Source of the DNA: Vitrella brassicaformis CCMP3155
Lineage: Eukaryota > Protista > Chromerida
Assembly: GCA_001179505.1 (NCBI GenBank)
Contig: CDMY01000666.1
Location: forward strand, 62,001 to 126,000
Length of the DNA stretch: 64,000 bases
Direction: 5' to 3'
A model generated the notes under the pieces. That model was not told where the DNA came from. It ran no database searches and saw only the letters and a list, made by a program, of their open reading frames with translations. Position numbers and translations under genes: made by a program. Positions within the stretch are counted from its first letter, which is position 1. Every line of letters begins with the position of its first letter. Shown in pieces: positions 21,955-42,544 of this stretch.

Positions 21955-23526
21955 TTACTGCGAACGATTCCTCTCACTGTGCTCACTGACGGCTATCTCG
22001 GCAATCTTGTCAAAATCTTTGTGCGGCACATCTGCCAGATCGAATGCGCGGTCCCTGTTCTTTCTGACTACATGGTCATACACACTCCCGTATGGCCACG
22101 CCTTCTTGATGTCCTTCATGACGGGGTGCGGGATGCCCGGCTGGTTCTCCTTTGGCGCCGAAGGGGCCGTCCATACCGTGACGAACCACACAGGGATGGA
22201 GATGTAGGGGCACTGAGCCACCGACTCGATGTCGGACGCACCGTCAACCAGACCAAGGACGTCTGCATGTGTCGCGAAACCTGACACATGCACACGCTGA
22301 GTACTCACACGATTCCCTTTGTGTGTTTGCTGAGTACGAGTACCTGAGAGGATGGCCTGTGAGAACGCCTCGATCTCTGTGCGAGGCGAGTTGTCCCGGC
22401 AGATGACCATGCCCATCAAATTGTTGGGATTGTCGGTCAAAATCTCCAGCTGGATACCCTTCTTCAAGAAGGCCTCCGTGAGGTACGGCTTCAGCGCCCC
22501 GAGAAACGCCTGCTGAGCTCCACTCTGCACAAACCACGCACACACGGACGTGAAGGTGCGTGCATACGCGTGCGTGAGTGCACTGACCGTCTTGTAGGCT
22601 CCGTTTGAGTAATGCAGCCCCAATCGGCACACTTGAGCCCCCCGAGGCTTTGGCGGTGTCACCGTCTTACGCTTCTCGTGAGATGGTGCTGTTGACGTCC
22701 CGATCTGCAGCCGCACTTCACTCGTCGGCGTCTCGGTCTCCCTCGTCCGGGGCGTCAATGAGCCCTGCGATGATGACGATGTCGTAACGCTCTCCTCTTG
22801 GGCCTGCACAGACACACACACACACACACGCACACGCACACGCACACGCACACACATGCACACACATGGCACCGTGGAGGCATTTTTGTGTCGCTTGCTA
22901 ACCTCAGCCACTTCCAGCTGGGATGCAACCTCAGTTGGAGGAGGGGTGAAGGCCCAGTTCTCAGGCACCGCACTCGAGATCCTGGGGTCGCCGAGGAAGT
23001 CGATGATGTCGATTCTGGGCATCGTTTGCCTCCCCTCCAGACGGATGTACTGCCCGACGGCGCCATCGACGTAGTGCTCACGGTTCGGCTTGTCCGTATA
23101 CTCCCAATCTGGCCCTCGCTTGTACTTGTACTGCAGAACACCATCCTTGCGCAGGGTGACCTGGATCTCCTTCTGATACATGACGCCCCTGGGGCAAGCA
23201 CAACAGAGAGACGTACAGGAAGCTTCAAATTATGCCGCCGCATCACTCACTTACTTGAGGCAGCATCTTTCGTCCTTCTCATTGAAGGTCGCCTCCGGCC
23301 TTGGTGCCTCATCCCAGTGGCCTGAGCGCACACACAGAAAGGTACGATTTCCCCTCCTCATACGCTAAGCTCGCTTACCGATCTCTGGGCAGTTGCCGTG
23401 CACACTCAACGGGAAAGTGGTGCTGGGCTTCTCTCCCACAGGCAGGAAGACTCTGAACCTCAACGTCACTTTGTTGGTCTTTGGCGTCCAACTTGAAGGC
23501 ATGATAGCAGGTAGCAAATTGCCCAT
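21955..23526 (-). CDS. C1: N-terminal Met-Gly protein with CBM20-like (starch-binding) domain, S/T-rich linker and uncharacterised C-terminal alpha/beta domain
   Basis: MGNLL start. VTLRFRV..LSVHGNCPEIG|HWD..K|GVMYQKEIQVTL..LQYKYKRGPDWEYTDKPNREH fits the CBM20 pattern (GxxxELGxWD, YKY, WE..NR). C-domain RLGLHYSNG..GMVICRD..IPVWFVTVW..QPGIP..AWPYGSVYDHV. Confidence 0.75.
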
Positions 23527-23614
23527 GTTTGCGTCGTTTCCTCTCTTTTGCGCACTTCCACGCGTCATATGGCTGGTGCCATGGGCAGCCTACTATCAGG
23601 GCGCCTCTCTTCGC

Positions 23615-23690
23615 GCCCGCATCCGCATCCGCAGCTGATCCGCACTGATCCGCAGCTGATCCGCAAACTGATCCGCGTCCGCAGCTGTTC
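23615..23690. repeat. Tandem (GATCCGCA/ATCCGC)-core repeat in the C1/G2 divergent intergenic region
   Basis: ccgcatccgcatccgcagctgatccgcactgatccgcagctgatccgcaaactgatccgcgtccgcagctg read directly. Confidence 0.85.
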
Positions 23691-23843
23691 CGCACAGAAG
23701 GGCAGCCAGAGATCTCTCAGCAAGCAGTCGTATCTGCTCGCCCCTTTTCATTCGTGTGCGCCTTTTCTCTTGGCCTCCTCCAGCCCTGCCTTCATCCGGC
23801 AGTATTTTGTCCCTTGTCCGTTGATTGAGATCAAGTAATCGGA

Positions 23844-25913
23844 ATGAGCGGCCTCCGCACCACACGCATCGGCTCCAGCAGCATCCTGCCTACGACCGAA
23901 GGCTCTCGGGGTCTGGGCGAGTCAAGCGAAGTCATCACGCAGGAGGACCACGCCGAGTAAGGGGGGAGGGAGAGATGGGAGCTTTGGGTGCTGTACGCTG
24001 AATCGTCCTCCCTTCTGCAGTGTCAAGGAGGTCAAGACCTTTGTCAAGGGGTACCAGGGAGACCTCGCCATCATCCTCGTGACGGGAGCACCAGGGTAGG
24101 CAGCGAGTGGCTACTTGGCATTCTGTCAAGTGTGGGCCTTTGATGTGTTTGTTCAGCGTGGGCAAGTCGACTCTGTGCAACCACATGCGTAGTATCATGA
24201 ACGCCAAGGGCCCGTGTGACAACTATGTCTCGGTACACCCACGGCCAAGCCACACACATCGTTGTATGTCTGTCTGTCTGTCTGTCTGCCTACTGCTGTG
24301 CGTCCGTCGCTTCCTTCGGCTGCAGTATACCCGTACGCGCCCCGGTAGCCACTCCGGCAGCGTCACTTCCCTGTTCGAGACGTACACACTCGGCGGCAAT
24401 GAGCGCGTCTGTCTGCAGGACGGCAAAGGTATGTGATGCGTGCTTGCGAAGAACTGATGCCTCCAGCTCTCCTGTGTGTCTGTGTGTGTGTCCGTGCGTG
24501 TGAGTGTAGGTCTGGAGGATGGTGATTTGGGTTTGCTGGAGCTGGCCATCACGGGTCGGCTGATGAACAACTTCGACATGACGGTCAGCATGGACGCCAT
24601 CAAGGAGGCTCAGGCCAAGAGGGGGGCCAATAAGCGGCTCACCGAAGAGGACAAGAAAATCCTCGACCGCCTGCGGTGAGTAGCACCCACAAACGATGGC
24701 CCATTCATTTGGCACGTTCATCTTGATGTGTGGGTGGGTGTGTTGGTGTGTGGGTCGCTTTCTTTCTTCACGCAGGTCGGGGAACGACGATGATCCTGAG
24801 CTGGAGCGTTTCCGTCCCAAGGCCGTGTTCGTGGTGCTCGATGCGACGGCCCTGGGCGACCGAGAGGGCGAGGCCATGGTCAGGTACCGTGACATGGTCG
24901 AGAAGATCCACGGTAAGTCGGTCACATGCGGAAGAGAATGTGAGTGGTCTGCTCATCTCATCTTTCTCGCCCGTGTACTTGTGTGTCATTCCTCGTGTGT
25001 GTGTGTATGTGTGTGTGAGCAGAGCACGAGATCAAGGTCTGCATCATTCTCAACAAGTGCGACGGGGTCATCGGGGACCTCGAGGAGCGCAGGGCCATCT
25101 GGAACGACCCCGTCTCTCTCCTGGACAGACCTGAGGTGGAGAGGCTGATCGAGGAGGTCTCGGAGGACCTGGGGTGAGTGAGCACAAAAGAGGCGTGAGT
25201 GAGTGCTTAGTCGACCTGTCTGTCATATGTCTGTGTCGTGACATGCAGCGTGGAGCCTTTCGACGTGTATCCGATGCTTGCTAAGCCCAAGAGGAAGGAA
25301 CTCAGCCCCGCACACAGCCTGCTCGTCATTCGACCGTTTGGCTTCATCCTCAGCGAGCTCAAGAAATGCGCTAGAGAGTGAGCATGCATAAGACACACAC
25401 GCATATGGGGTGCAATGGATGTGCCTCCGCTGTCTACAACGTATGTAATCCATGCAGAAGCGTGCACGACCCACAGGAGTGCGCCCCCGTGGCCGACGAC
25501 GAGTCCGACGACGAGGACGTAAGCTGATACGCACACTCGGGACACACGTCGTGTGCGCACTACTTTCTGCACGTATGTATGTCTGTGTGCTGCATCTCAA
25601 GTAGGGAGAGGTCGTCTCGTCTGATCAGCCGACCAAAGACGCGAGCGGCCAAGACAACCAACGCATTTTTGACCATCGCAGTTTCATTGACGTGTGCACT
25701 GTGGTGCTTGTCTTCTCTGCTTTCGTGCTGGCATTGCCACTGATCTTTTCCTGCGCTGCTGTCTACCGCTGGATGCACATGAACCGTGATGATGGTGCTG
25801 GGGGGCGGGCGAGCGCGATGCACAGCGTGACTTATCCCTTGGACGCACTGGATGAGGATGCGGCAAGGGAGATAGCACGCAATGGGCGCTACCTGGCAGC
25901 GCCACCATCATGA
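23844..25913 (+). CDS. P-loop GTPase paralogue G2 (IFI44-like), C-terminal transmembrane anchor
   Basis: MSGLRTTRIG..; IILVTGAPG|VGKST; SVTSLFETY; CLQDGKG; KAVFVVLDAT; IILNKCD; acidic exon; last exon with VCTVVLVFSAFVLALPLIFSCAAVY and DAAREIARNGRYLAAPPS*. All splice phases are compatible. Confidence 0.85.
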
Positions 25914-26853
25914 ATGGAGGCTAGGTAGGAGGATGTGTGTGAGTGTGCTTTTGGGATGATGGCACCATTGTGTCTTGTCTGGATGGGCGGACGACACGAG
26001 ACTCAGAGAGTGCTGTCGGACAGATACGTTTTTGTGTTTTTCCGTCCTTGCCGTGTTCATGCCTGCACGATCATCGCTGGTGCGTGGTCCTTCTGATGTG
26101 TGGTTGTACTAATGTGTACGTCAGCCTGAGTTGGTCTTCCTGTCTGTCTGTCTGTCTGCCAGTGGTGAGTGAGTGAGTGATCGACGCAACGCGAGAATCG
26201 AGAATAATCGTTTTTCGTGGGCGACAAGAGAGATGTGGGTGGGTGGGTGCATGCAGTGTGACGACAGTCCTTTTTCGTGAGCAGTAGATGTGTGTGCGGA
26301 CTTTCATACCATGTGTGTGCCTTATCTCAATGGAATTTTGTAACACTCCCGTGGTCAGTCGCAGCACAAAAATGATTCAACATTCCGCATCAACCACCAC
26401 ACACGCCATCCATCCCGTCAGCCATAATCAGCTCTCGGGCTGGCCGGCCGTGACGCCACAACGAGTCACTGTGGATGTGTCGCGGGTTTGTGCACACGTG
26501 ATCATGAGTCGACGATCCTCAGAGAGAGAGAGAGCTATGCTTCATGCAGATCGAGTTATCGGACATGGCCATCATAGTGTCAAACACGCAACACGTCAAG
26601 ATATAAATGAGGTCAGCACTTTTCGGCTTGGTGTAAGCACTTTACCGAAAATTACTGCAGGCACGCCAACCCACACGTATCGTGAGCCTCTTGCGTCTTG
26701 CAGCTGTCGACCATCCCCTCTCATGTACGCCGGGCAGTCAACGCTACGCAACGGGAGAGGCTTTGTCATGAACCAGCTCCATCTGTCCAGCAATTGGCTC
26801 ACCTACCTACCCACCCCCTCACCCACCCTCCCACCCACACACGCAGGCAGCCA

Positions 26854-28988
26854 TCAAGCCGCACACCACAAACGGGCCCCGACCTTCTGGTGGTTTCTGC
26901 GCCTCTCTTCACTGACGGCTGTCTCCGCGATCCTATCAAAAAAGTGACGCGGCAAGTCCGCCATGTGGAGCGTACCATCCCTGTTCCTCCTGATCACGTG
27001 ATCGTAGACAGGGCCGTGTGGCCACGCCCGGCTGATGTCCTTCGCGACGTTGAGTGGGATGCCCGGCTGGCTGTCTGGCTTGGTCGTCCACACGGTCACG
27101 AACCAGATGGGAAGGCACGCGTAGGGGCACTGAGCCAACGACTCAGTGTCCACCGCACCATCCGACAGACCCAGGGCTTCCGCGTGCGCCGTGAAGCCTG
27201 ATCCACGGACACATCACAGACGTGCAGCGAGGAACACTCGTGTCTCCGCCTGGCTTTGTGGGTGCGTCTTTCAGAGTACCCGACCTGAGAGGATTGCTTG
27301 TGAGAAGGCCCTTATTTCTGTACGAGACGTATAGTCCCGGCAGATGACGATGCCCATCAAGTGGTCAGGATTGTCCGTCAGGACTTCCAGACAGACGCCC
27401 TGCTTCACAAAGGCCTCCTTGAGGTGCGGCGTCAGGGCCTCGAGAAACGTCAGTTGGGACTCGGTCTGCACAATCGTACATATTCACCGACACGCACAAG
27501 CAAAGGTGTGACTATACACACATACATAGCGCCGATGCACTGACCGGCCCATTTGCTCCGTTTGCATAGTGCAGCCCCAATCGCCACGTCTGACTTCCCC
27601 CTTCGACCCTCTCGCCGCCGTCTCTCTCGGGCAGCGTGAGGGAAGCAGGCGATGGGAAAGCTGAAATGCTCTCCTCTGAGGCCTTCGCACACAGACACAC
27701 AAGGCAGGAGAGACGCAGTCCCCATGAGGGATTTGTTGCCACGACCTTGGGTCGGTAGGCTTCCAACTGGGGATCATCGTCATCCCCGGACCTGATGAAA
27801 CCACACATCGGACACACATCAGCGATCTGTGCACAGAGAAAACATCACACTGCGCACACATTGCCCTACCGCAAGAGTGACATCGCGTTCTCCTCCTCCC
27901 TGGTGAGCTTCTTTCCCAGGCCTTTGTTGAAATACATGTCCTTGATTCCTTCACAGCCGAGCTTCATGTTGAAGTTGTCTTTCATCCGGCCCTCCAAGTT
28001 CAGCTTCAGCAAACCCAAATCGCCATCCTCGATCTCCAGCCCTGCATACACACAGAGGCAGGCAGACATGCGTGCATTGTGATGATATGAGGGGTGCGTA
28101 AGACCCATATACGTCACGTACCTTTGCCGTCCTGCAGGGACACGTACTTGATGCTCACAAGTGGTGTGAAGGTCCGCGCATCACGTCGCCACGTCGTCTG
28201 AGCCCTCCCGCAGTTGTCCAGATGCGCATCATGCCTCGCCGCCAGGGAACCATTGGCAGAGGACGCTGGGATGCTCTCCTCTGGAGCCTGAGCACACACA
28301 CAGACAAGCACGAGAGAGATTCAGTTGCCAGCAACCAAGCAGGAGCCCAGCCTACCATTGCCACACCCGTCTTGGGCTCGGCCTCCGGCTGGACTTGTGT
28401 GATGGCGAAGCCCACGGGCATGGCAATTGAGTTGTTGGGGCTGCCGAGGAAGTCGAGGATGTCGATCGCGAGCGGCCCCTGCCTGCCCTTCAAGTAGTAC
28501 TGGCCCACATAGCGGTCGATGCAGTGCTCGCGGCTCGGGAGCCTGTCGTTGTACTCCCAGTTGTCGCCACACTTGTACTTGTACTTCAGCATGCAATCGT
28601 CAGGTAGGGTGACCGTGATCTCCTTCTGCCACATGAAGCCACTGGTAGCACAACAACACACACACACATAATTGGGCAATGTAGATGTGAGGTCGTCCTT
28701 ACTTGAGGCAGCGATGTTTCTCCTTCTCGGTAAAGGTGGCCTCCTTGGTCTGCTCATCCCAGTTGCCTGCACACAGCCGCACACAAAGCACACATTCCGC
28801 CTGTCCCCTCTCCCGAATTTTGGCATAGCTTCTCGTCGCACCCAGCTCAGGGCAGTTACCGCGAATGCAGAGGGGAGGGGGGTGCTGTTCCTGTGGCGTT
28901 TGTCAGGGTCGGTAAGGTGATTCTCAAATCCGGGAAGGAAGACGCGAAACCTCAACATCACCTTGTTGGCGGAAAGCTGGCCTCCCAT
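26854..28988 (-). CDS. C2: CBM20-like + alpha/beta-domain paralogue, chimeric (carries GTPase exons) and with an apparent frameshift in exon 1
   Basis: MGGQLSANKVMLRFRVFLP. The conserved LCIRGNCPELG motif is in a shifted frame after the G6 run at 28877-28882. Then GNWD..CLN|GFMWQKEI..LKYKY..WEY..SREH; C-domain WRLGLHYANG, GIVICRD, LPIWFVTVW, QPGIP, AWPHGPVYDHV. Confidence 0.7.
27745..28150 (-). other. GTPase-gene fragment (exons and introns) inserted inside C2, near-identical to G4 at about 32640-33035
   Basis: Encodes SLQDGK|GLEIEDGDLGLLKLNLEGRMKDNFNMKLGCEGIKDMYFNKGLGKKLTREEENAMSLLR|SGDDDDPQLEAYRP. Intron sequences are also shared with G4. Confidence 0.9.
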
Positions 28989-29061
28989 GCTTTCGTCCCC
29001 TTCCAGTACAGTGTATCAAGGGCGGCGTAAATTTGTCCCTTGCCGTTTGCGCAGATCAAGA

Positions 29062-31056
29062 ATGAGCGGCCCCCGCACGACACGCATCGGCTTCAGCAGC
29101 ATCCTGCCTACGACCGGAGGCTCTCGGGGTCTGGGCGACACGACCGATGCCATAACTCAGCAGGACAACGCATTGTGAGACCTCGGGAGGACAAAACGAG
29201 GGACACACACACACAGACACGCACACAGTGTCGTTTCGGTGGCGCAGGTTGAGGGATGTCAGGCGATTCGTCAGGGGGTACAAGGGCAAGCGTGTCATCA
29301 TCCTGTTGACCGGAGTGCCAGGGTAGCACACAGGAAGGACATCGTCCTATTTCTTGTGGTGGTCTTTCCTTTGTTCATTCAGCGTCGGCAAGACGACACT
29401 GTGCAACCACATCCGCAGTATAATGAACGCCAAGGGCCCGTACGACAACTATATCGCGGTAAGCGGCTCGCTCACCCTGTCAGTCACATCCTCCTTCGGC
29501 TGCAGTATTCCCGCACGGCTCCCGGCAGCCACTCAGGCAGCGTCACGGGCCTGTTCGAGACGTGGATGCTGGGCGGCAACGGGCGCGTCTGTCTGCAGGA
29601 CGGCAAAGGTATGCATGCAGTCCAATCGTTGTAGTCGCTCAGTCAGTCATCATGCCTTTCGCCGCCTTCATCGCGATCTTCTCTCTCTCGCTCTCTCTGT
29701 CTCTCTCTCTGTGTGTGTGTGTGCATGTGCAGGTCTTGACGAAGGCGACACGGACCTGCTGGATCTTGCCGTCACGGGCCGCCTGAGAAATGGGTATGAC
29801 ATGACGACTCCGATGGACAAGATCAAGGAGGTGCTGGCCAAGAAGGGCATGGGAAGGACGCTCACAGAGGAGGAAAAGAAGACCCTCGATCACCTGCGGT
29901 AGGCCTGGCCAGGCTGAATGTCTACACACGTTGTAAATCTAGTCATTCGACTCTGTGTGTGTGTGTGTGTGCTTGTTTTTCATTCAGGATGGGTGCTGAC
30001 GATGATCCCGAGTTGGAGTGTTTCCGTCCCAGTGCCGTGTTCGTGGTACTCGATGCGACGGCCATTGGTGACCGAGACGGCGTGACCATGGTCAAGTATT
30101 GTGACATGATCGAAGTCATCCACAGTTAGTAACGGCACAGTGGAGAAACTCGTTGCTGTGTCTTTCTGTCTCGTGTCTTGCCTTGTGTGCGTATGTGTGT
30201 GTATGTGTGTGTATGCAGAGCACAAGGTAAAGCTTTGCATCATTCTCAACAAATGTGACAAGCTCATCGACGACCCCAAGGAGCGCGACGCCATCTGGAA
30301 CGACCCCATGTCGATCCTGGAGAGACCTGAGGTGGAGAGGCTGATCGAGGAGGTCTCGGAGGACCTGGGGTGAGTGAGCACAAAAGAGGCGTGAGTGAGT
30401 GCTTAGTCGACCTGTCTGTCATATGTCTGTGTCGTGACATGCAGCGTGGAGCCTTTCGACGTGTATCCGATGCTTGCTAAGCCCAAGAGGAAGGAACTCA
30501 GCCCCGCACACAGCCTGCTCGTCATTCGACCGTTTGGCTTCATCCTCAGCGAGCTCAGGCGACGCTACAGAGAGTGAGCACGCAGCACAGCCACACCCTA
30601 CGGGCATTGCGATTGAATGCACTTTTCGTCTTATCATCCGCGTGAATGTGTGTGAATGTGTGTGTACACAGAGAGCTGTACGAACCAGGAGCGTACTCGG
30701 ACGTGGAGGACCCCGAGTCAGACGAGGAGGAGGTAAAGCGACATGACACACGCACGCGCCCATGGATGCACGCATGTCCTCTGTCTTGGACGGATTCTTC
30801 TCTCTCTGTACGTGTGTTGCCTCTCAAGTAGGGAGAAGTTGTCTTCTCTGGCACATGCCTCCTTGTTGACGTGTGCACGGCAGTGCTTGTATTCTCTGCT
30901 ATCGTGCTGGCGTTGCCATCGCCCTCCGCCTGTACTGCTATCTACCGTTGCAAAAACATCAGACGGTTCTCGGGAGGGGCGAGGGACATAGGACGCGCAA
31001 CTGAGGACACGACAGGCGAGAAACATGGATGCGTGTGTGTCCTGGCTGCCTGCTGA
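29062..31056 (+). CDS. P-loop GTPase paralogue G3 (IFI44-like), C-terminal hydrophobic anchor
   Basis: MSGPRTTRIG..; IILLTGVPG|VGKTT; SVTGLFETW; CLQDGKG; SAVFVVLDAT; IILNKCD; acidic exon; last exon VDVCTAVLVFSAIVLALPSPSACTAIY..CVCVLAAC*. Confidence 0.85.
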
Positions 31057-31917: not shown

Positions 31918-34056
31918 TCAGCAGGAGTCGTAGTCCGACTCGGGGTCGTCCTCTTCACCAGACGACATCTCATCGTCCATGTCGACCCGCTCCCTGCACG
32001 GAGGCCAACCAAGAACAGGTGCATGTGCTTGGATGCGTGCATGGCTCTGCTTTGCTGCATGCTCACTCTTCGTGCAGGCACTTGAGGTCGTCGAGGACGG
32101 ATGTGAAGGGTCGGATGACGAGCAGGCTGTGGTCGGGGTTGAGCTCCTTCCTCATGGGCTTCGAAATCATCGCGTAAACGTCCAAGAGCCCCACACTGCA
32201 CAAATGCATACACACGCAGAGCCGCGGTCGCACGTATTTCCTTTCATGCTGCCACTCCCTTTCCTTTCCTTTCCTCTCACCCCAGGGCCTCCGACACTTT
32301 CTCGCACTCCTCCGTGACCTTTGGTCTGTTGAGGATCGCCATGGGGTTGTTCATGAGGGCCTTGCGCTCCTCGGGGTCGTCGATGAGCTTGTCACATTTG
32401 TTGAGAATAATGCAAAGCTTTACCTTGTGCTCTAAATACACGCATACAGAGAAGAGGGAGAGAAACAGAGACATGAAGCGGGCAGATGCAGCACAGGGAT
32501 GAGCACATCACAACCACGACTACGAAGCAGCCTCTCTGCACTTGATTACTTACTATTGATCTCCTCAACCATCTTGCGGTAATTTTCGAGGCCACTCTCA
32601 CTCGTGGCAGCCGCATCGATGACCAGGAACACAACGTTGGGTCGGTAGGCTTCCAACTGGGGATCATCGTCATCCCCCGACCTGATGAAACCAAACCACA
32701 CATCGGACACACATCAGCGATCTGTGAGCGGAGAGAACATGACACTGCGCACACATTGCCCTACCGCAAGAGTGACATCGCGTTCTCCTCCTCCCTGGTG
32801 AGCTTCTTTCCCAGGCCTTTGTTGAAATACATGTCCTTGATTCCTTCACAGCCGAGCTTCATGTTGAAGCTGTTTTTCATCCGGCCCTCCATGGCCAGCT
32901 TCAGCAAACCCTCATCGCCACCGCCGATCTCCAGCCCTGTATACACACAGAGGCAGGCACACATGCGTGCATTGTGATGATATGAGAGGTGCGTAACACC
33001 CATATACGTCACGTACCTTTGCCGTCCTGCAGACATACGCGCTCGTTGCCGCCCAGCATGTACGTCTCAAACAGGGAAGTGACGCTGCCGGAGTGGCTGC
33101 CGGGAGCCGTGTGGGAATACTGCACACCCACACAACGCCACTAGGAAAGTGGAGGGCTTGCACTGGTTGCTCACTTCCACATATCGGCCGTGCGAGCCCT
33201 TGGCGCTCATGATGGATCGGCTGTGGTTGCAGAATGTCGTCTTGCCGACGCTGAATGAAGACAGCAAACAGTGTTTCAAAATGTGTGCGCCAGGCAATCA
33301 TCTTTATGCATCATACCCTGGCTCGCCAGTCACTATAATTTTGAGAGGCTTGCCCTTGTAGTCCCTGATGGAGCGCTTTTTCTCCTTCAACCTGCAGCCA
33401 CCAAAGAAAGGAACACAAGCCCAACATATACGTCTGGGGGGGGGAGCCACTATCACCTGAGACGTATGGGTGGGGATATCAGCGGGTCACGTGCCTGCAT
33501 CACCAGCCAGTCATACACAAGAGATGATATTGTGCAGAAGTGATTGAGTGTCGTGGAACTCGTGATGTACATGTGCCGACCATAGGAGCATCGTCGTCGG
33601 AGTCTTCCGCCATCGCCACATCCCCATCAGACACATGATTCATTAGCCCACTGCATAGAAAAATAAGCACACACCCACTACATTATCGCTAATCTCGCCA
33701 CTCTCTTCATCCCACCCACTTCTGCACGTGAGCGAAAACTATGATCTTGTCTTTGGCAGCGACCGGCAGCGGGCGGAGGAAGCCGTTGATCTCCACGGCA
33801 TACCCGCCATGGCCATCTCCATAGACAAAATGGCCGTCGAGCAAACCAACAACTCTCGGGGGCAAGCCTGGCTCCTGAATGACACACCATTCAGAACAGA
33901 CAGACCAGACAGGCAGGCATCAGAGACCGACAATCACCGTCGATGTATTTGCCTTTCTGTCTCAGTAGTGGTCACCTGTGCTGAATAGCCTGACGACGAT
34001 GGGGCTCTGCCGTCGCTGCCGGGCGGCCTGACCTCCTGATAGGCAGCATTCTCCAT
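31918..34056 (-). CDS. P-loop GTPase paralogue G4 (IFI44-like), shares the G1 N-terminal module; ends at the acidic exon; 5' end may extend to about 34380
   Basis: MENAAYQEVRPPGSDGR; EPGLPPRVVGLLDGHFVYGDGHGGYAVEING; IIVTGEPG|VGKTT; SVTSLFETY; CLQDGKG; NVVFLVIDAA; IILNKCD; ELNPDHSLLVIRPF; ..EDDPESDYDSC* (TGA 31918-31920). Confidence 0.8.
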
Positions 34057-34585
34057 CAGTGTGTAACGCTGCCTCCCACGAGCAACGCAATAACGAGACC
34101 TGCGGGAAGCACAGGAAGCGACACTGTCAGGCGGGAAATGGGCTGTGTCTGCGCTGCACCTGGTGAACGCAGATGTGCCGGGACCGACGAACCCCAGTGG
34201 CGGCGGCTGTGTTGTGAGTGTGAGCGCACTCTGCCGCAGCTGCTGTTGTCGCGGCTGCTCGTGTGTCAGCTGCTCAGCCTCTCGCGGAGAGGGCGACAGC
34301 TCGATGTGCGGCGGCAAGGAACGGAGCGAGGGAGCATAGGCCTCAAATATTTCGCGGCCCCCCCCCCCCTCAGACATCAATTACGCACAGGCGAAGTTTA
34401 CGGGTACAGTGTACGCCGACTTCGCCACGGAAGACAGTTTGAAGGGTCGCGCTGACGACTTCGACGGCGCCGACTCGTGGGCGGGCAGAAGCAATGGCGT
34501 CACAGTGCTGTACATGCATGTCACAAATGCTGTTGTGCTTGTGCGGATGGCAGGCCCGCAGGATGGCGCGTGACAGGCCTCCACG

Positions 34586-36160
34586 ATGAGCGGAGCCCCC
34601 TCCACGATGAGCGGCGGACACCCGGTCCCCCCCGGGCTCGTCGTCAATGCGGAGGGCCCGAATGGGCAGCCGCAGACGTCGTCGTACGGAGGGGATCAGT
34701 GGCCACACGAGCCAGATGGACAGATGGGCGCCTCCGCTCCCTCTGCCTCCCAGCACACGAACCCCCCCAACCTAGACAACGCCGATGCGTTGCAGCTGCA
34801 GAGCCTGGACGCCTCCGAGATGTCCCAGCTGATTCAACAGGGGGGCGGGCCACACCAGATGATGATCCGACATCAGTCGCAACAGCACCCGATGTTCAAT
34901 GCATGGCTGCTGGCAGGGCTGAATATGATGGTGAGGGAAAGAAGTCCATTTTCCGTATGTATGTGCGTGTCATTTTCTTACCGCAGGAAGACGCCCAAAT
35001 GCAGTTCATGGCTTCGACGGTGGCCCAGCAATCGGCCATCGCTCCCACAGTGGCCACACCCACAGCCGAGCCCACAGCCTCCCATCAGACGTCGATGGCC
35101 CCATCATCCGTCGGTCGTCGGAGGAGTAGCAGCAGGCGACGTCGACAGGCTCCCCAAGCACTGCTGCAGCAGGCGGCGATGCAGGTATGGGCTGCATGCT
35201 TTGCATCGGTCACGTGTCATGATTCTGGTACCCTGTCTGCAGAACACAGAGTCCGTCTATTCTGGGGCGGGGTCGCCTCAGGTGGCTACCGACTGGCCCA
35301 CTTTTATCATGTCACTCTCTGGTGAGTACAACCATCGCATGTCTTTCATGGTCGACACGCTGTCTTCTCTTCAGATACCGGTGTCATCTCCATTCTACGC
35401 CAGTTCTGGAGCAAACTGCGAGTCGACTATGACCGTTCACACACGGACCCCGACTCACAGGACCAGGGGGATCTGCAGAGCCGCTGGGCGTGGATCGACA
35501 CATCCGATGTCATGCCTTGTCTGGAGCTTGCCCTGTCGGGCCCTGTTGATCAAGAAGGGAGGCTCGGTGCATCGAGAAGGGACGTCTATCGACCGTACTA
35601 CGACCCGATGGGCCTGTGGGAGCCTGCAGAGGACCAGACACAAGGGTGGGACCCAGACAAGCCGGCTCAGTGCTGTATACCTGTCCCCAACGAAACCCCT
35701 CGCGTCATCCCATACGTCCCTGTGGACCGCCCGACACCAGACGACAAGATGAACGTGGCCTTCTGCAGGGTGTGTGGCCACGTGGAGAGGAGGAAGGACA
35801 TTACCAGGCACATCAAGAAAAGACACAAGGAGCTCTTCGTAAGCAGACATGACGAGTTACACGTCTGCAACCGGTGTACTCGTCTGTCTTTCGTGAGACA
35901 GGCGATGCCTAGCACGCCCACGTCTGCCTGCAGCATCACCGGACAGGTAGGCGAGCACATGGTTGCCTTATGTGCTGTGTCTCTGTCCGTCCATCCCATG
36001 CATTCGTCTGCAGGGGAGCAGTCAGCCGAGCGGCCAGTGAGAAGCACACCCACGGTAGTCCACTTCTGCTACTGGCAGCGGCCACCTGTGACTGGCGATT
36101 TCTCTTCTGGTGCCTTCCCTGCACACGGCCAGGCGATGGGGCACTCAGCAGCTGAGGAGT
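34586..36160 (+). CDS. Z1: Q/P/S-rich protein with a C2H2-type zinc finger; 3' end approximate
   Basis: Low-complexity N-terminal exons, then ILRQFWSKLRVDYDR..CCIPVP..VAFCRVCGHVERRKDITRHIKKRH (C-x2-C-x11-H-x4-H). Confidence 0.65.
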
Positions 36161-36404: not shown

Positions 36405-36582
36405 ATCTGTCTGTCTGTCTGGCTGGCTGTCTGTCTGTCTGGCTGTCTGGCTGTCTGGCTGTCTGGCTGTCTGTCTGTCTGGCTGTCTGGCTGTCTGTCT
36501 GGCTGTCTGGCTGTCTGGCTGTCTGGCTGTCTGTCTGTCTGTCTGTCTGTCTCTCTGGCTCTCTGGCTGTCTGTCTGTATTC
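36405..36582. repeat. Compound (CTGT)/(CTGG) microsatellite
   Basis: About 180 bp of alternating ctgt/ctgg 4-mers read directly. It generates the spurious QTDR/CLAVWLS ORFs. Confidence 0.95.
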
Positions 36583-37349: not shown

Positions 37350-37959
37350 TCATTGGCTGCATCTATGGTACGTGTGCCCAATTTTATGGCGGCACGAGTA
37401 AGGAGACGAATGCGTCTCTCCACTTCTACGCCATACACACATACCCCCACATAGATAGATACATACATACATACATTCCGAACACGTCGCTGATGGCCAT
37501 TCCAGAACACTGCCCTCATGGATCGACAGTCAGTGGGCGAGGGAGTCCGTCAAGCGACGAGGTCGCTTTTTGCCTCTCCCTCATTTGTTCTGGCGTGTGT
37601 CTGCTGTGCGGTCGGCCCTTTCCTCTCTCCCTCTGCTGTCCTCATGTAATGTGCTGTGCTGTACATGGGCAGTTCTCTGTCCGCATGTCTGGACAAGGGT
37701 GAGTGATCAATTGCATAAGCGACTCTGACCGAATATGGTGCAAGTCATTTTTGGTGTCTCATCTGAATGGAATTCGACGCAGCCATACTCACATGAACTC
37801 ACACATCGTCACTTCCACGTAACCACCGCCTTGGCGCGTGCGGTGCTGGGGCCAGGAGTGGCGCCATTCGTACTCGACGAACGGGTAGAAGACCAGCAGC
37901 AGGATGGCGACAGTTCTGATGGCACGGACAGAGCGAAGGAGGGGGGCACACACACGTGA
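37350..37959 (+). pseudogene. Divergent or degraded 3' portion of the lineage-specific family also present at 56550-57979
   Basis: RHFHVTTALARAVLGPGVAPFVLD (37.8-37.9 kb) aligns with DRFPKTTRLARVALGRVAPFVFD. Nucleotide match gtggcgccattcgt. Upstream exons are only weakly recognisable. Confidence 0.5.
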
Positions 37960-38444
37960 ATGAGTGTATGGTACACACGAACAGAGACACAGACGCGCAT
38001 CTCCATTATGTGGCTTATGTATGGGTCAGATTCCACCACTGCTGGCAACGGTGATGGGGAAGATGTGATGTGGATGACGGGGTAATGTGACATTTATCGG
38101 TGGATCATGCTCAGGCGTACGTGCGTGCCACCTGTGATTTGTTTGGCTATGGCAGGGAGACATGAGGATCTCATTTTTGGTTGGTCGATACATACATTCA
38201 TTTATTCGCACATGCGTACATACATAGAAAAGCCAGAGACAGATGGCTACGCTGATTTCTCTTCGGGAGTATGTGCGTGTGAAGTGAATATGTTGGACAC
38301 TGGTGTTATGCAGTGAACATGTAAAGTGTACTGCCACGCGTAACAGAAGCTCATTCAGATAGACGAATGTCCGCACCACACCACATACAAGTCGAATCGC
38401 ATCACAGAGGAGAAAAGAGTATGACACCCAACAAAGACTGCCGT

Positions 38445-39962
38445 CTAGCCAGCTGTCCTTTGGCTGATAGCCGCCAAGGCGATCTCATCGAAAAGAGCAT
38501 GGGGCGCATCGGCCTTGTGGAGCGTCCCGTCCTTGGACATTCTGACCACGTGATCGTGGACAGTGCCGTGCCACCAGGCCTTCTTGATGTCGACGTTGTA
38601 CGGGATGCCCGGCTGGCTGCCAGGCGCATCCTTAAACGTGCTCAACAGCCACACAGGGAGACGCGCGTGGGGACACTCTCTCAGAGACTCAAGCGACACA
38701 GCATCACTCAAACCCAGCACTTGACTATTTGCTTTGAACCCTGATACACGGACAGACAGAGAGGAGTCACACGATTCCCTGAGCCTGTCTGGTCTGCTGA
38801 CTTGCTCGATTACCTGAGAGGATAGCGTCCCTTATCACCTCGTTCTTCGCGCGAGACGTGCGATCGCGACAGATTATGATGCCGACCAACTGGTCGGGAT
38901 CGTCCTTCAGAATCTCCACACGAATGCCCTTTTTCGCGAACGCCTCACAGATGTAGTCGCCAACATCCTTGGCAAATGCAAGCTGACTCTTCGTCTACAC
39001 GAGAAGCAACCAAGAAACAATGTGACACACACACACACACACACACAGAAAACGCCACAGACCCACCGCGGTTTTCTGTCCATTGGCGTAGTGCAGCAAC
39101 AATCGCACCGGCGGCGTCTGCGTCTCCTCGGTAGTCACTGGAGGCTTGAGTGCCGGCACTGTTGGGCGATTGAATCGTGTCGTAGCGACTCTGTCAGGGG
39201 CCTGAGAAGTGGACGACGGTCTCTTGGACACAGCACCTTGGTCCTGTGCACCCGCACACCCGTGGCTCTCTCGAGTGACAGACACATCTTGCTTGTGCTT
39301 CTCCCGTCCATCATCTGGGGTGAAGTCCCAGTTCAGCGTCGTCGCAAACGAATACCCGGTCTCGGCGGTCTCGCCAAGGATGTCGATAAACCGGAAAGTT
39401 GGAGGCCCTCGACGTCCCATCCCTATCGTGGTTGCATACTTGTTGGTGTACTGCCACACAGCTGTGCCGAGCGGCTGCTCACGGTCATCGCCATCATGCT
39501 CCCACTGCTCTTTGATCTTGTACTTGTAACGCAGAACACCGCTGTCGGGCACCGTGATGGTGATCTTCTTCTGGAACACAACGCCGCCCCTGGACACAGA
39601 CAAGTCAAGATCATTGAGATCTTTGACATCCTCTGCAGCTTCTCTCACTTGAGAACACATAGCGCCTCCTCCGTTGCGCCTCCTCCGTTGCATACATTTG
39701 TTCGTGAGGCTGGAGTGAAAGTGAAGGTGTTCTCCTTTGTGCGCTTATCCCAATTACCTGCATTCACACACGAACAGATCTCCACCTGCGCTTTGCCATT
39801 TTTAGCTTGCAAGAGACGCCGGGGAGAGGTACCAAGCTCTGGGCAGTTGCCGTGAATACTCACGAGGGAGTCTTTGTTGAGGTTCCCCCCAATCACAGCG
39901 AACCACACTTCCGCATGCTTCCCTGGAGATAGCTGATTTGCTGAGGATAACTGCGGCCACAT
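38445..39962 (-). CDS. C3: CBM20-like + alpha/beta-domain paralogue
   Basis: SIHGNCPELG|GNWD..K|GGVVFQKKITITVP..LRYKYKIKEQWEH..DREQ; RLLLHYANG; EAFAKKGIRVEILKDDPDQLVGIIICRD..DAILS; LPVWLLSTF..QPGIP..AWWHGTVHDHVVR. First ATG at 39962; GTG-GGA-GAT-CTT-CCA-GCC-ATC at 39986 matches the C1 N-terminus. Confidence 0.75.
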
Positions 39963-40029
39963 GAAGATGGCTGGAAGATCTCCCACTCTCACGGCTGCAG
40001 CGATGGGCGGAAAACGTGGACTTCCCAGT

Positions 40030-40095
40030 CCGCTTCCGATTCCTACTTCCGATTCCTACTTCCGATTCCGACTTCGGCTTCCGAGTCCGACTCGC
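40030..40095. repeat. Tandem (TTCCGA/TTCCTA) hexamer repeat in the C3/G5 divergent intergenic region
   Basis: tccgcttccgattcctacttccgattcctacttccgattccgacttcggcttccgagtccgact read directly. Confidence 0.85.
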
Positions 40096-40164
40096 TTGCC
40101 GCTGCGTGTCAGGATCATCCAGTCTGCGGTGCACGTTCTTGCATCATTGCGCGATTCATCCAGC

Positions 40165-40982
40165 ATGAGCAACGAAGCAGCACCCGCCAAGGCGAGAGCG
40201 GCGTTCAGCGAGGGACCTGGTCACACCCACACCACCAATACGCTGCCGCCGCCGCCCGCACCACCCATCGCCATGCTCCTGCCGACCGCGCCCGCGGGTG
40301 CAAGCAAGAAGCCACCGAAGGAGAGGAAGGAAGAAGCCCCCAAGAAGCCACCCACAGAGAGGAAGAACTGTCGAGCGTCCTCGGGCAGCTACGACTACAG
40401 GGGCATCTTGCCTCCCGAGTTTGGCGGCACTCGCGCGCAGGAAGATGACGACCCCGACAAGTTCAACAAGAAGTGAGTGTGGGCGAAGGGGCGAGGAGGG
40501 GGAGAAGGGGGAATGGATAGGGTCTGTCTCTATCCTTTCTTGGTGCTGCAGGTTGGTGGAAGTCAAGCGGACCCTCAAGGAGCACAAGGCATGTATTGTC
40601 AGCGTCCTCCTGGCTGGCGAGCCTGGGTATGATGAGCAATCAGCCAGGCTCAGCCCATCCTTCTGTTTCTTATCTATCGATCTCCTGCTCATTCAGGGTC
40701 GGCAAGTCGACGTTTTCGAACCGTGTGCGTTCCATTTTGAAGGCGAAGGGCCCGAGCGACAGTTTCGTCCAGGTGAGACACGCGGCGGCAGCACCATGCC
40801 TTCGTCATTCTGTTGTGATTGATCGTGTCCCGCGCTGCATGCAGTTCACTCGCACGACTCCGGGCAGCCATGAGGGCAGCGTCACATCGACGTTCGAGAC
40901 GTACGAACTCGGCGGCAACAAGCGTGTCCTTCTGCAAGACGGCAAGGGTGCGCACGGTCGCTCACGCTTCATCATAGCGATC

Positions 40983-41017
<35 letters not shown>

Positions 41018-41488
41018 TGTGTTTAGGTCTCGAGGATGGTGACACCGACCTGCTGGAGCTTGCCGTCACGGGCCGCCTGAGAAATGGGTATGACATGACG
41101 ACTCCGATGGACAAGATCAAGGAGGTTCTGGCCAAGAACGGCATGGGAGGCGCCGCTGATCTCACCAAGGAAGAGGAGAAGATCATCTCGCTCCTGCGGT
41201 AGGGACCACAGGACGCATTGCCACAGATCACACACAACAACTCGTCGCTGTCTGTGGGTTTGTCTGTCTGCATGTGTCAGACTTGGCAGTGAGGCCGAGT
41301 GTGAGGACTACCTCCCAAGGCCGTGTTCCTGGTCCTCGATGCTTCGAACACGGGCGACACATCCCTCGACCAGTATCAGGAGTTCGTCAGAGTGATCAAC
41401 AGTAAGTATCACACACACACACACACATACACGCGCAGACACTCAGACACACACTCCTTGACAACATGTCGGCCCTGCATCCCCCGCA

Positions 41489-41521
<33 letters not shown>

Positions 41522-42544
41522 ATGTGTGTGTGTAGAACACAAGGTGAAGCTCATGGTCATCCTCAACAAGTGCGACAAGATCATCGAGGGCCCCGAGGAG
41601 CGCAAGGCCGTCAGGGATGACCCCCTGTCGATCATCGATCATCCGGACATCGAAGACAAAGTCGAGGAGGTCTCGGAGACCCTGGGGTGGGCGATACGCA
41701 CGCAACACAAACATGTACACACACTACCCAACGACCTGTGCTGTTGGTGTGCATTCAGTGTTGAGAGCTACAACGTGTTTCCGATGATCAGCCGGCCCAG
41801 ATCGACGCAGCTGAGCCCCGCCCAAAGCCTGGTGATCCTGCGACCGTTTGCATTCGTCATGACCAACCTCAAACGCTGCAACAGGGAGTAAGCGAGCAGC
41901 ACACCGACTTGACAGGAAGCCACGCATTCTGTGTATATGTCACGTGGTGTGTGTGAATGTGTGTGTGTGTGGCGGCTGCAGGAAGCTGCTCGACCAAGAG
42001 GCAGTGGAGTACTCTGACGGCGAGGACATCGAGTCCGAAGATGAGGATGACGACGGAGTAGACGACACCGAAGACGACGCAGCGGTAGGTAGTGCACAAC
42101 ACACATCCACAGTGTCCATCGACCCATTCTTTTCTCCTCTGTGTGCTGCATATGAAGTAGGAAGACGTTCGCAGTACCCAAGACAATGCCAGACAAGACA
42201 ATCCCGCCCGCACCCAAGACACCCCCCCTATCGGCCAAGACACTCCCGCCCACACGCAAGACCCACTCTCTCTCAGCCAAGACAATCCCCGTCCCGCCCA
42301 AGACACACCTTCTCCCGCCCAAGGTCGTCCTTCGCCGAGAAGTCAACCCTTTTTTGCTCGGAGTTTCTTCTGCGTGTGTGCCGTCGCACTTGTGCTGGCT
42401 GCCATCGTGGTCTTTCGTTATGTACCGGCCCTTTCCTTCGCCTCTTTCCTGTGTGCCTGGCTGCCTTACACTCGACGCATGCATATGAATGATGACGTGG
42501 CCAGGGATATTGCACGGAACGGGCGCTATCTGCTGGCGCCATGA
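40165..42544 (+). CDS. P-loop GTPase paralogue G5 (IFI44-like), P/K-rich N-terminus, QD-repeat linker and C-terminal transmembrane anchor
   Basis: VLLAGEPG|VGKST; SVTSTFETY; LLQDGKG; KAVFLVLDAS; VILNKCD; QLSPAQSLVILRPF; acidic exon; last exon ..FFCVCAVALVLAAIVVFRYVPALSFASFLCAWL..DVARDIARNGRYLLAP* (TGA 42542-42544). Confidence 0.85.
42176..42325 (+). repeat. Degenerate 21-bp coding minisatellite (QDxPxxx heptads) in the G5 last exon
   Basis: caagac recurs about every 21 nt: TQDNARQDNPARTQDTPPIGQDTPAHTQDPLSLSQDNPRPAQDTPSPAQ. Confidence 0.8.

What the first reader, a model, noticed from the sequence alone, without database searches (positions are those of the whole stretch)
21955..42544. Repeated head-to-head two-gene module: CBM20-like/alpha-beta protein + tail-anchored IFI44-like GTPase
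Seen: the same divergent pair occurs three times: C1(-)/G2(+) with ATGs 317 bp apart, C2(-)/G3(+) 73 bp apart, and C3(-)/G5(+) about 200 bp apart. C3/G5 are highly diverged from the other pairs, yet orientation and pairing are kept. All three paired GTPases carry a C-terminal hydrophobic anchor, and C1/C2 begin Met-Gly (myristoylation-type). Established: CBM20 binds alpha-glucans (laforin, STBD1), animal IFI44/IFI44L are interferon-induced antiviral P-loop proteins, and divergent sensor/executor pairs are typical of immune loci such as paired plant NLRs. Inference: a co-regulated membrane-associated sensor + GTPase system for defence or glucan/organelle surveillance in a protist. I know of no description of this pairing.
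Basis: partly seen in the sequence, partly recalled or inferred. Interest (0 to 1): 0.92.

Follow-up and report, generated by a model that had tools for sequence, protein, structure and literature searches.

The report
Duplicated GTPase–partner gene pairs in Vitrella
In the alga Vitrella brassicaformis, one back-to-back gene pair (an IFI44-like GTPase and an orphan starch-binding-like protein) was copied three times within one locus; only one copy is still fully intact, so the repetition reflects local duplication and not proof of a defence module.

Summary
The layout is real. Three C(-)/G(+) head-to-head pairs sit at the stated places in Vitrella brassicaformis contig CDMY01000666.1, all are transcribed, and the ATG spacings (317/341, 73, about 200 bp) hold.

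- **Not independent:** an exhaustive search of 1.84 billion proteins finds the C family only as these three genes. C1/G2 and C2/G3 are adjacent ~5.3-kb tandem units, so the repeats share one origin.
- **Two pairs are damaged:** the C2 mRNA has its Met-Gly exon out of frame and carries G4-derived exons. G5 has a 1-nt deletion in exon 6 that gives a premature stop, in both the genome and the RNA contigs.
- **Unpaired G genes:** G1 and G4 have no C partner.
- **G identity:** G is an IFI44-like GTPase by fold and language-model searches, with intact G motifs and no TLDc domain.
- **C identity:** C is CBM20-like only below threshold. Its C-terminal domain has no match.
- **The "tail anchor":** it lies behind an in-frame TAG that is the first codon of the last exon in every assembled transcript. 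A conserved AAG|TAG|G tandem acceptor in G2, G3 and G5 could skip it.
- **Myristoylation:** unsupported.

Best reading: a birth-and-death tandem cluster. Earlier scan notes on this same window cover the five-G expansion and the C2 chimera.

The parts
19214..21495 (-). G1: IFI44-like GTPase paralogue with an N-terminal extension and no TM tail; no C partner (it lies downstream of C1 on the same strand)
   Evidence: The transcript contig L005 maps as 10 exons. Protein P0009 ends ...SDEEEVTDGTQTHIGNIRGSDV. Annotated as 460 aa.
21955..23502 (-). C1 CDS (399 aa, P0001): CBM20-like N-terminal domain, low-complexity linker and an unassigned C-terminal alpha/beta domain. Exons 23378-23502, 23254-23320, 22903-23187, 22588-22803, 22342-22524, 21955-22278. 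In-frame upstream ATGs at 23526 and 23568.
   Evidence: RNA joints. My spliced model equals P0001. The cDNA contig L002 translates to it. Upstream ATGs.
23844..25604 (+). G2 CDS as spliced in all RNA contigs (337 aa, P0002), ending at TAG 25602-25604, the first codon of the last exon. G1 motif GAPGVGKST, DGKG, NKCD.
25599..25913 (+). G2 tandem acceptor AAG|TAG|G (25599-25604) followed by an in-frame 102-codon tail ORF with a TM segment and the C-terminal motif AREIARNGRYLAAP
26854..28988 (-). C2: rearranged copy. The MGGQLS first exon (ATG 28988) is out of frame with the rest of the mRNA. The main ORF (441 aa, P0005) starts at MWQKEITV (28634) and lacks the first half of the CBM20-like domain.
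   Evidence: Transcript contigs L006 and L007 from two assemblies. P0005 sequence.
27740..28137 (-). G4-derived GTPase exons with their introns inserted in C2 and spliced in frame into its mRNA
   Evidence: 93.3% nucleotide identity over 403 nt to 32630-33032. The exons are present in P0005.
29062..30831 (+). G3 CDS (337 aa within P0003), ending at TAG 30829-30831, the first codon of the last exon. The tandem acceptor AAG|TAG|G is at 30826-30831; the tail ORF 30832-31056 has a TM segment.
   Evidence: L004 mapping. Acceptor sequence. Tail.
31918..34377 (-). G4: IFI44-like GTPase paralogue with an N-terminal extension shared with G1 and no TM tail. Convergent with G3 and head-to-head with an unrelated 378-aa gene (34607-36040).
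   Evidence: L003 mapping. P0004. Annotation. hhalign of the C family against the neighbour is negative.
38445..39962 (-). C3 CDS (412 aa, P0007), intact. Exons 39831-39962, 39648-39755, 39067-39588, 38813-38994, 38445-38739. The mRNA 5' end reaches at least 40125.
40165..42160 (+). G5: transcribed IFI44-like GTPase copy with a 1-nt deletion in exon 6 (C-run at about 41312-41316) that gives a premature TGA at 41393-41395. The homologous frame would end at TAG 42158-42160.
   Evidence: RNA joints with no indels against the genome. Exon-6 nucleotide alignment of G1-G5. Frames.
42155..42544 (+). G5 tandem acceptor AAG|TAG|G (42155-42160) and a 127-codon tail ORF with a TM segment and the C-terminal motif ARDIARNGRYLLAP

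Best explanation
The region is a lineage-specific, tandemly duplicated birth-and-death gene cluster in Vitrella brassicaformis.

**Origin.** One ancestral head-to-head unit was duplicated locally. It held an orphan gene C (CBM20-like domain plus an unknown alpha/beta domain) and an IFI44-like TRAFAC GTPase gene G. It was first copied into the C3|G5 and C1,2|G2,3 lineages. The second lineage was then copied as a ~5.3-kb direct tandem unit into C1|G2 and C2|G3. G-only copies (G1, G4) acquired an N-terminal extension and lost the tail.

**Turnover.** The paralogues exchange sequence by gene conversion and decay individually: C2 is rearranged and G5 is frameshifted. The thrice-repeated pairing is therefore inherited from one event, not re-selected three times.

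**How a unit works**
- Shown: C and G are transcribed divergently from a 50-340 bp spacer, with 5' ends that abut or overlap.
- Shown: G has intact G1/G3/G4 motifs. Its dominant mRNA encodes a soluble ~337-aa protein, because the last exon opens with TAG.
- Inferred: using the AG 3 nt downstream in the conserved AAG|TAG|G acceptor removes the stop and adds a C-terminal membrane span with a conserved luminal motif. One gene would then give a soluble form and a membrane-bound form.
- Inferred, weakly: C binds alpha-glucan through its CBM20-like domain and acts with G as a co-expressed partner.
For: - **Organism and models:**. All genes are transcribed and spliced as modelled.
- **C family range:** an exhaustive phmmer of C1 against 1.84e9 representatives finds only C1, C2 (plus a C2/G4 assembly chimera) and C3.
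- **Tandem unit:** C1 to C2 ATGs are 5486 bp apart and G2 to G3 ATGs 5218 bp apart. Similarity is confined mostly to exons.
- **Divergence order:** it is parallel in both families. C1-C2 55% and C1-C3 40%; G2-G3 71% and G2-G5 49%.
- **Gene conversion or recent transfer:** a 114-nt identical run between G2 and G3, 91% over 166 nt between G3 and G5, and 93% over 403 nt including introns from G4 into C2.
- **Lesions:** C2 and G5.
- **Unpaired G genes, and a non-C partner for G4:**
- **Short divergent spacers are common nearby:** SF3b10/Dus 159 bp, hydrolase/226-aa gene 109 bp.
- **IFI44-like fold:**
- **TAG at the tandem acceptor:** present in G2, G3 and G5.
- **Tail under protein-level constraint:** 13 synonymous-only against 10 non-synonymous codon differences in 37 conserved codons. 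The other two frames are closed.
- **Precedent:** removal of a UAG by distal NAGNAG acceptor use was shown experimentally for CFTR E831X (PMC2951375).
Against: - Both partners have stayed together despite deep divergence (40-49% identity). Only the tail-bearing G clade sits next to C. Either could reflect selection for linkage rather than inertia.
- C2 and G5 are still transcribed at levels similar to their neighbours, so "decay" may be recent, or the truncated products may be used.
- No transcript using the distal acceptor was seen. Only assembler contigs were available, and these drop minor variants, so the membrane isoform rests on conservation alone.
- The G fold model is of moderate quality (pLDDT 55, pTM 0.62).
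- The CBM20 assignment is below the Pfam threshold.
Confidence: 0.68

Rival explanations
1. The pair is a genuine two-component module kept together by selection. C senses or localises to a glucan or organelle surface, and its partner G is the membrane-recruitable GTPase effector. The shared or overlapping promoter ensures stoichiometric co-expression. Duplication then produced diversified sensor/effector pairs, as in paired immune receptors.
For: - All 3 known C genes are head-to-head with a G gene.
- The pairing has persisted through divergence to 40-49% identity.
- Only the paired G genes have the TM tail and the conserved TAG acceptor.
- Transcript contigs of C and G merge across the spacer.
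- The IFI44-like fold has an immune association in animals (PMC7459546).
- There is a weak TIR/flavodoxin-like lead for the C-terminal domain of C.
Against: - There is no independent occurrence outside this one locus.
- One partner is damaged in 2 of 3 pairs.
- G1 and G4 exist without C.
- With three C genes, tree congruence cannot be tested.
- Adjacency is the default outcome of unit duplication, and short divergent spacers are common here.
- No HMM support for TIR or any other domain in the C-terminal part of C.
- Myristoylation is unsupported.
Confidence: 0.24
2. The hydrophobic tails are relics. The ancestral G protein was tail-anchored, a TAG arose at the acceptor, and the present proteins are only soluble. 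The downstream ORFs are decaying 3' UTR.
For: - Every assembled transcript and database protein stops at the TAG.
- The G3 tail has lost the C-terminal motif.
- G1 and G4 lost the tail altogether.
Against: - The same TAG is present in G2, G3 and the diverged G5. Even so, the G2 and G5 tails keep open frames of 102 and 127 codons, a TM segment and an 11/13 identical C-terminal motif. Their many synonymous differences rule out recent conversion as the cause.
- AAGTAG is a plausible alternative tandem acceptor (PMC2951375; general NAGNAG knowledge).
Confidence: 0.35
3. The pairing is an artefact of misassembly or of reading noise as genes.
For: The assembly's gene set has no model on record for G3 or G5.
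Against: - Independent RNA contigs from four runs and two JGI transcriptome assemblies match the genome exon by exon.
- DNA runs hold 92-97% of the sampled words.
Confidence: 0.01

Closest known systems
IFI44 / IFI44L (interferon-induced protein 44 family) GTPase domain
   Same: - The G2 model's five best Swiss-Prot fold matches are mouse, chimpanzee and human IFI44 and IFI44L. They align over ~300 residues to the C-terminal G-domain region (E 3e-7 to 9e-6, TM ~0.5).
- Fold-cluster matches are named IFI44-like in fish, molluscs and a haptophyte. Unnamed relatives occur in Acanthamoeba, Paramecium, Monosiga and Naegleria.
- Language-model neighbours score 0.96-0.97.
- P-loop, DxxG and NKxD motifs are present.
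   Different: - There is no TLDc domain (no Pfam TLD hit).
- No sequence-level HMM match reaches a threshold.
- It is found in an alga with no interferon system.
- It has an optional C-terminal TM tail behind a TAG, and it belongs to a five-gene local cluster.
CBM20 starch-binding domain (Pfam PF00686), as in glucoamylase, laforin and STBD1
   Same: - CBM_20 is the only Pfam family hit by the N-terminal domains of C3 (E 0.0031, 17.7 bits) and C1 (E 0.2), at collinear profile positions.
- UniRef names C1 'CBM20 domain-containing protein'.
- The motif pattern (LGxWD ... YKYK ... WE..(4)..NRE) fits my recollection of CBM20. This is from memory and was not tested.
   Different: - Both hits are below the gathering score of 23.3 bits.
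- No PDB CBM20 was found with the family profile.
- The AF2 model is too poor to test the fold (pLDDT 37).
- It is fused to a C-terminal alpha/beta domain with no detectable relatives.
Tandem birth-and-death clusters of immune-type GTPases (IRG, GBP, GIMAP loci in animals and plants)
   Same: Local duplication, gene conversion, pseudogenes mixed with intact copies, and rapid divergence. This comparison rests on established knowledge of those loci.
   Different: - The duplicated unit here is a two-gene head-to-head pair that includes an orphan non-GTPase partner.
- No induction data exist for this locus.
Stop-codon removal by alternative NAGNAG acceptor use (CFTR E831X, PMC2951375)
   Same: A TAG forms the second NAG of a tandem acceptor, so the distal AG deletes the stop from the mRNA.
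   Different: - There it is a disease mutation. Here the configuration is conserved in three paralogues, and the stop separates a soluble GTPase from a TM tail.
- Use of the distal site has not been observed here.

Membership tests
IFI44/IFI44L family | G domain of the IFI44 type: TRAFAC GTPase fold with a helical C-terminal extension, closest to IFI44 among known proteins | tested here: met
   Foldseek top 5 in Swiss-Prot are IFI44/IFI44L. AFDB clusters are named IFI44-like. Atlas feature score is 0.96-0.97. Caveat: the model has pLDDT 55 and pTM 0.62.
IFI44/IFI44L family | N-terminal TLDc domain (vertebrate architecture) | tested here: not met
   No TLD hit in Pfam scans of G1, G2 and G4. 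G2 has only ~50 residues before the P-loop.
IFI44/IFI44L family | Induction by interferon or infection | not testable with these tools
   Only assembler contigs from a few culture RNA runs were available.
Active P-loop GTPase | G1 GxxxxGK[ST], G3 DxxG and G4 NKxD motifs present | tested here: met
   GxPGVGK[ST]T, DGKG and NKCD are invariant in G1-G5. In G5 the NKCD exon lies after the frameshift.
CBM20 (PF00686) | Match to the family HMM at the gathering threshold | tested here: not met
   Best 17.7 bits (C3) and 11.9 bits (C1) against a cutoff of 23.3. It is nevertheless the only family hit in both.
CBM20 (PF00686) | Beta-sandwich fold with the two glucan-binding sites, and binding of starch or amylopectin | tested here: inconclusive
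   The AF2 model of C1 is unusable (pLDDT 37). The model does predict strands across residues 11-140. Binding cannot be tested here.
Tail-anchored membrane protein | A single C-terminal TM segment that is part of the translated protein | tested here: inconclusive
   TM-grade hydrophobic segments exist in the G2, G3 and G5 tails. They lie after an in-frame TAG in all assembled mRNAs. Conservation argues that they are translated. 35-48 residues follow the TM segment, which is longer than in classical tail anchors.
N-myristoylated protein | Initiator Met followed by Gly, with a small or Ser/Thr residue at position 6, on the translated ORF | tested here: not met
   - C1: MGNLLP is one of three in-frame starts, has Pro at the key position, and the annotated start is MPSSW.
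- C2: MGGQLSA fits the motif, but that ORF is out of frame and ends after 84 codons.
- C3: starts MWPQ.
TIR domain (lead for the C-terminal domain of C) | Match to TIR profiles, or a confident flavodoxin-like TIR fold with the catalytic Glu | tested here: not met
   No hit in Pfam, PADLOC or a PDB profile search. The only support is Atlas feature scores of 0.79-0.81 and TM 0.56 on a low-confidence model, which are within the chance range.
Conserved operon-like two-gene module (paired sensor/executor) | The pairing recurs independently: in other loci, in other genomes, or as fusions | tested here: not met
   The C family is confined to this locus in 1.84e9 proteins. The only 'fusion' is the G4-exon insertion in C2, which comes from local rearrangement.

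The most novel reading that the evidence does not exclude
Three paralogous IFI44-like GTPase genes share a conserved AAG|TAG|G tandem 3' splice site that puts a stop codon first in the last exon. A 3-nt shift in acceptor choice would then toggle each gene between a soluble GTPase and a form anchored by a C-terminal membrane span with a conserved luminal motif. This switchable GTPase is co-expressed, from an overlapping divergent promoter, with an orphan CBM20-like protein that is its physical partner. Together they would form an alga-specific surveillance or defence module built on the same GTPase that animals fuse to TLDc in IFI44.
Probability: 0.15. Interest if true: 0.8.

Novelty: new variant of a known kind. 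Interest (0 to 1): 0.42.

Why it matters
- **For gene-neighbourhood inference:** the finding would matter most as a cautionary case. A striking thrice-repeated gene pair can be fully explained by local duplication.
- **For the IFI44 family:** IFI44-type G domains occur outside animals, in an alveolate alga and, by fold matches, in amoebae, ciliates, a haptophyte and a choanoflagellate. Here the family forms a dynamic cluster with conversion and pseudogenes, which is the genomic behaviour typical of immune-type GTPases.
- **A directly testable new element:** the conserved stop-in-NAGNAG acceptor. If used, it is a minimal 3-nt splicing switch for membrane anchoring, kept by selection in several paralogues. 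That mechanism has so far been documented experimentally only as a disease-allele modifier.
- **A tractable orphan:** the C protein is a lineage-restricted family for asking how new partner proteins arise beside old GTPases.

Tried and rejected
- **Word-indexed protein searches** reached only the window's own proteins, so the taxonomic range of G could not be measured by sequence.
- **AF2 of the C family** with a 3-sequence alignment failed (pLDDT 37), so no fold search was run on it.
- **Profile searches of both C domains against PDB sequences** gave only noise. Pfam, PADLOC and NCBIfam gave nothing for the C-terminal domain.
- **TLDc identity for the C-terminal domain of C** (which would make C+G a split IFI44) was considered. 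It was rejected because there is no TLD hit and the predicted alternating alpha/beta pattern does not suit that fold.
- **The gene head-to-head with G4** is not a hidden C relative (hhalign probability 0.3%).
- **Distal-acceptor mRNAs** were sought in JGI metagenome contigs with a junction pattern covering both splice forms. There were 0 hits, and the pattern was validated on L003 and L004. That collection does not hold the Vitrella transcriptomes, so the result is uninformative.
- **Rescue of the G5 frame** by alternative acceptors in exon 6 was checked by hand against all AG positions. None restores the homologous frame.
- **Depths of assembler contigs** were not used as expression measures.
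- **A formal tree-congruence test** was dropped. Three C genes give a single unrooted topology, and conversion tracts blur the G tree.
Full report
**Source and gene models**

The C1 ORF query returned a single 399-aa protein, P0001, from Vitrella brassicaformis CCMP3155. UniRef names it 'CBM20 domain-containing protein'. Its locus is contig CDMY01000666.1 of GCA_001179505.1.

Public runs hold the stretch. DNA-type runs hold 92-97% of sampled words. RNA-type runs hold ~51-57%, as expected for exons only.

I laid assembler contigs of four runs on 21700-27600 and on 37700-43600. I also mapped cDNA contigs fetched by protein identity: L002-L007 and L009.

| Gene | Strand | Position | Notes |
|---|---|---|---|
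| G1 | - | ~19214-21495 | protein P0009 |
| C1 | - | CDS 21955-23502 | six exons; my spliced model equals P0001 |
| G2 | + | ATG 23844 | ten exons, poly(A) at 26345, protein P0002 |
| C2 | - | mRNA 26836-28994 | protein P0005 |
| G3 | + | mRNA 29045-31295 | protein P0003 |
| G4 | - | 31918-34377 | protein P0004 |
| C3 | - | CDS 38445-39962 | protein P0007 |
| G5 | + | ATG 40165 | last exon from 42158 |

tblastn with C1 and G2 finds no other copies in the 64-kb window.

**Check of the observation**

The three C(-)/G(+) divergent pairs are real.
- ATG-to-ATG spacings are 341 bp for C1/G2 (317 bp from the in-frame upstream ATG at 23526), 73 bp for C2/G3 and ~202 bp for C3/G5.
- RNA contigs of C and G merge across the C1/G2 and C3/G5 spacers.
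- A plus-strand GT..AG intron (23340-23439) lies inside the C1 5' coding region in one run.
- The C3 mRNA reaches at least 40125. So the divergent transcripts abut or overlap.
- For C2/G3 the contig ends are 28994 and 29045, about 50 bp apart.

Two G genes are not paired with C.
- G1 lies downstream of C1 on the same strand.
- G4 is convergent with G3 and head-to-head, at 230 bp, with an unrelated 378-aa gene.

**Is the recurrence more than duplication would give? No.**
- An exhaustive phmmer of C1 against 1.84 billion cluster representatives returns only C1, C2, a C2/G4 assembly chimera, C3 and one spurious Ig-repeat protein. Every C gene known anywhere is in this locus.
- C1|G2 and C2|G3 are adjacent direct tandem units. 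The C ATGs are 5486 bp apart and the G ATGs 5218 bp apart.
- Nucleotide similarity between units is mostly confined to exons, so the duplications are old.
- The order of divergence is parallel. C1-C2 is 55% and C1-C3 40%; G2-G3 is 71% and G2-G5 49%. This is what duplication of a two-gene unit predicts.
- With three C genes there is only one unrooted tree, so congruence cannot be tested further.
- Conversion or transfer tracts blur the G history:
  - a 114-nt identical run between G2 and G3;
  - 91% over 166 nt between G3 and G5;
  - 93% over 403 nt, introns included, from G4 into C2;
  - a shared 5' extension of G1 and G4.
- Short divergent spacers are common nearby between unrelated genes: SF3b10/Dus 159 bp, and a hydrolase and a 226-aa gene 109 bp.

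**Integrity of the pairs**

Only C1/G2 is intact on both sides.
- **C2.** In both transcriptome assemblies, the MGGQLS ORF is out of frame with the rest and stops after 84 codons. The long ORF (441 aa) starts at MWQKEITV and so lacks the first half of the CBM20-like domain. The mRNA also carries G4-derived exons spliced in frame.
- **G5.** Exon 6 lacks one nucleotide in a C-run compared with G1-G4.
  - The RNA contigs that cross this exon show no insertion or deletion against the genome.
  - The actual frame reaches TGA at 41393-41395, before the NKCD exon.
  - No AG in the exon offers a frame-restoring acceptor.
  - G5 is therefore a transcribed, frameshifted copy whose downstream exons are still open.

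**What the proteins are**

G proteins:
- They have invariant GxPGVGK[ST]T, DGKG and NKCD motifs.
- Their Pfam and NCBIfam hits are only sub-threshold generic P-loop or Era/EngA-type matches.
- An AF2 model of G2 (pLDDT 55, pTM 0.62) matches IFI44 and IFI44L as its five best Swiss-Prot hits (E 3e-7 to 9e-6, ~300 aligned residues, TM ~0.5).
- In the AFDB clusters it matches entries named IFI44-like in fish, molluscs and a haptophyte. It also matches unnamed G-domain proteins of Acanthamoeba, Paramecium, Monosiga and Naegleria.
- An independent language-model search puts IFI44-like clusters at 0.96-0.97.
- There is no TLDc domain.
- For animal IFI44/IFI44L, restriction of RSV was reported not to depend on the predicted GTP-binding region (PMC7459546). 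So even there the role of the G domain is open.

C proteins:
- CBM_20 is the only Pfam hit of the N-terminal domain in C3 (E 0.0031) and C1 (E 0.2), at collinear positions but below threshold.
- The C-terminal ~185-aa alpha/beta domain has no HMM, PDB or defence-library match.
- A TIR/flavodoxin-like lead (Atlas 0.79-0.81; TM 0.56 on a low-confidence model) is within the chance range.
- The AF2 model of C1 is unusable.

**Membrane claims**
- **Myristoylation is unsupported.**
  - C1 has three in-frame ATGs. The Met-Gly one has Pro at the critical position.
  - The C2 Met-Gly exon is out of frame.
  - C3 begins MW.
- **The hydrophobic tails of G2, G3 and G5 are real** (KD19 2.6-2.7). But in every assembled mRNA the last exon begins with an in-frame TAG, so the proteins end in an acidic stretch before the tail.
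- **All three genes have the same acceptor, AAG|TAG|G.** Use of the AG 3 nt downstream would delete the stop and join the tail in frame.
- **The G2 and G5 tails have been under protein-level constraint.**
  - They keep open frames of 102 and 127 codons while the other two frames are closed.
  - They share AR(E/D)IARNGRYL(A/L)AP at the very end.
  - In 37 conserved codons they differ by 13 synonymous-only and 10 non-synonymous codon changes.
- **I therefore infer that the tail is translated in a minor or conditional isoform.** This is an inference; no distal-junction contig exists. Removal of a UAG by distal NAGNAG use has experimental precedent (PMC2951375).
- **G1 and G4 have no tail**.

**Verdict**

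The pairs exist, but their repetition is explained by tandem duplication of one ancestral unit in a birth-and-death cluster. Two of the three pairs have a damaged partner.
- The defence-module reading remains possible (about one in four) but rests on no independent evidence.
- The domain calls are largely right for G and tentative for C.
- The most interesting concrete feature is the conserved stop-in-tandem-acceptor arrangement.

Earlier unchecked notes of this scan report further IFI44-like GTPases elsewhere in this genome without a C partner (s1-199321, s1-235883), and many CBM20 fusions. I did not verify them.

The identity figures for G5 depend on that reading.

Noticed in passing
window 25599-25604, 30826-30831, 42155-42160: The last-intron acceptor of G2, G3 and G5 has the same AAG|TAG|G form. 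The proximal AG, used in all RNA contigs, makes TAG the first codon of the last exon. The distal AG would read on into a conserved TM tail.
   Followed up: yes
window 41281-41401: G5 exon 6 has a 1-nt deletion in a C-run compared with G1-G4. The RNA contigs share it. It gives a premature TGA at 41393-41395, while the downstream exons stay open.
   Followed up: yes
window 28703-28994 (L006/L007 1-330): In the C2 mRNA, the first ATG ORF (MGGQLS...) is out of frame with the conserved remainder. There is a 1-nt loss and an 18-nt shorter exon 1 compared with C1.
   Followed up: yes
window 25248-25361 = 30444-30557; 29691-29854 ~ 40983-41148; 27740-28137 ~ 32630-33032: Conversion or transfer tracts between paralogues cause chimeric transcript contigs and chimeric database proteins: the palindromic L003, and P0006, a UniRef entry that joins the G4 5' part to the C2 3' part.
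   Followed up: partly
window 21036-21467 and 33720-34175: G1 and G4 share an N-terminal extension of unknown nature (80-90% nucleotide identity) that G2, G3 and G5 lack.
   Followed up: no
window 30827-31993: G3 and G4 are convergent and their 3' UTRs overlap. One contig runs through both gene ends.
   Followed up: no
window ~40040-40100: A 13-nt unit (GGAATCGGAAGTA) in the C3/G5 spacer differs in copy number between the genome assembly and the transcriptome contig L009. This argues that the stretch is non-coding for G5 and that the G5 start is the ATG at 40165.
   Followed up: partly
window 23340-23439 and 23570-23837: A plus-strand GT..AG intron lies inside the C1 5' exons (one run), implying a long G2 5' UTR antisense to C1. 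An 89-codon upstream ORF (MAGAMGSLLSG...) precedes the G2 ATG.
   Followed up: no
window 29062-31056 and 40165-42544: The assembly's gene set, as held in the look-up tool, has no gene model for G3 or G5, although both are transcribed.
   Followed up: no
window 34607-36040: An orphan 378-aa gene with no Pfam hit lies head-to-head with G4 at 230 bp. It is unrelated to the C family.
   Followed up: partly
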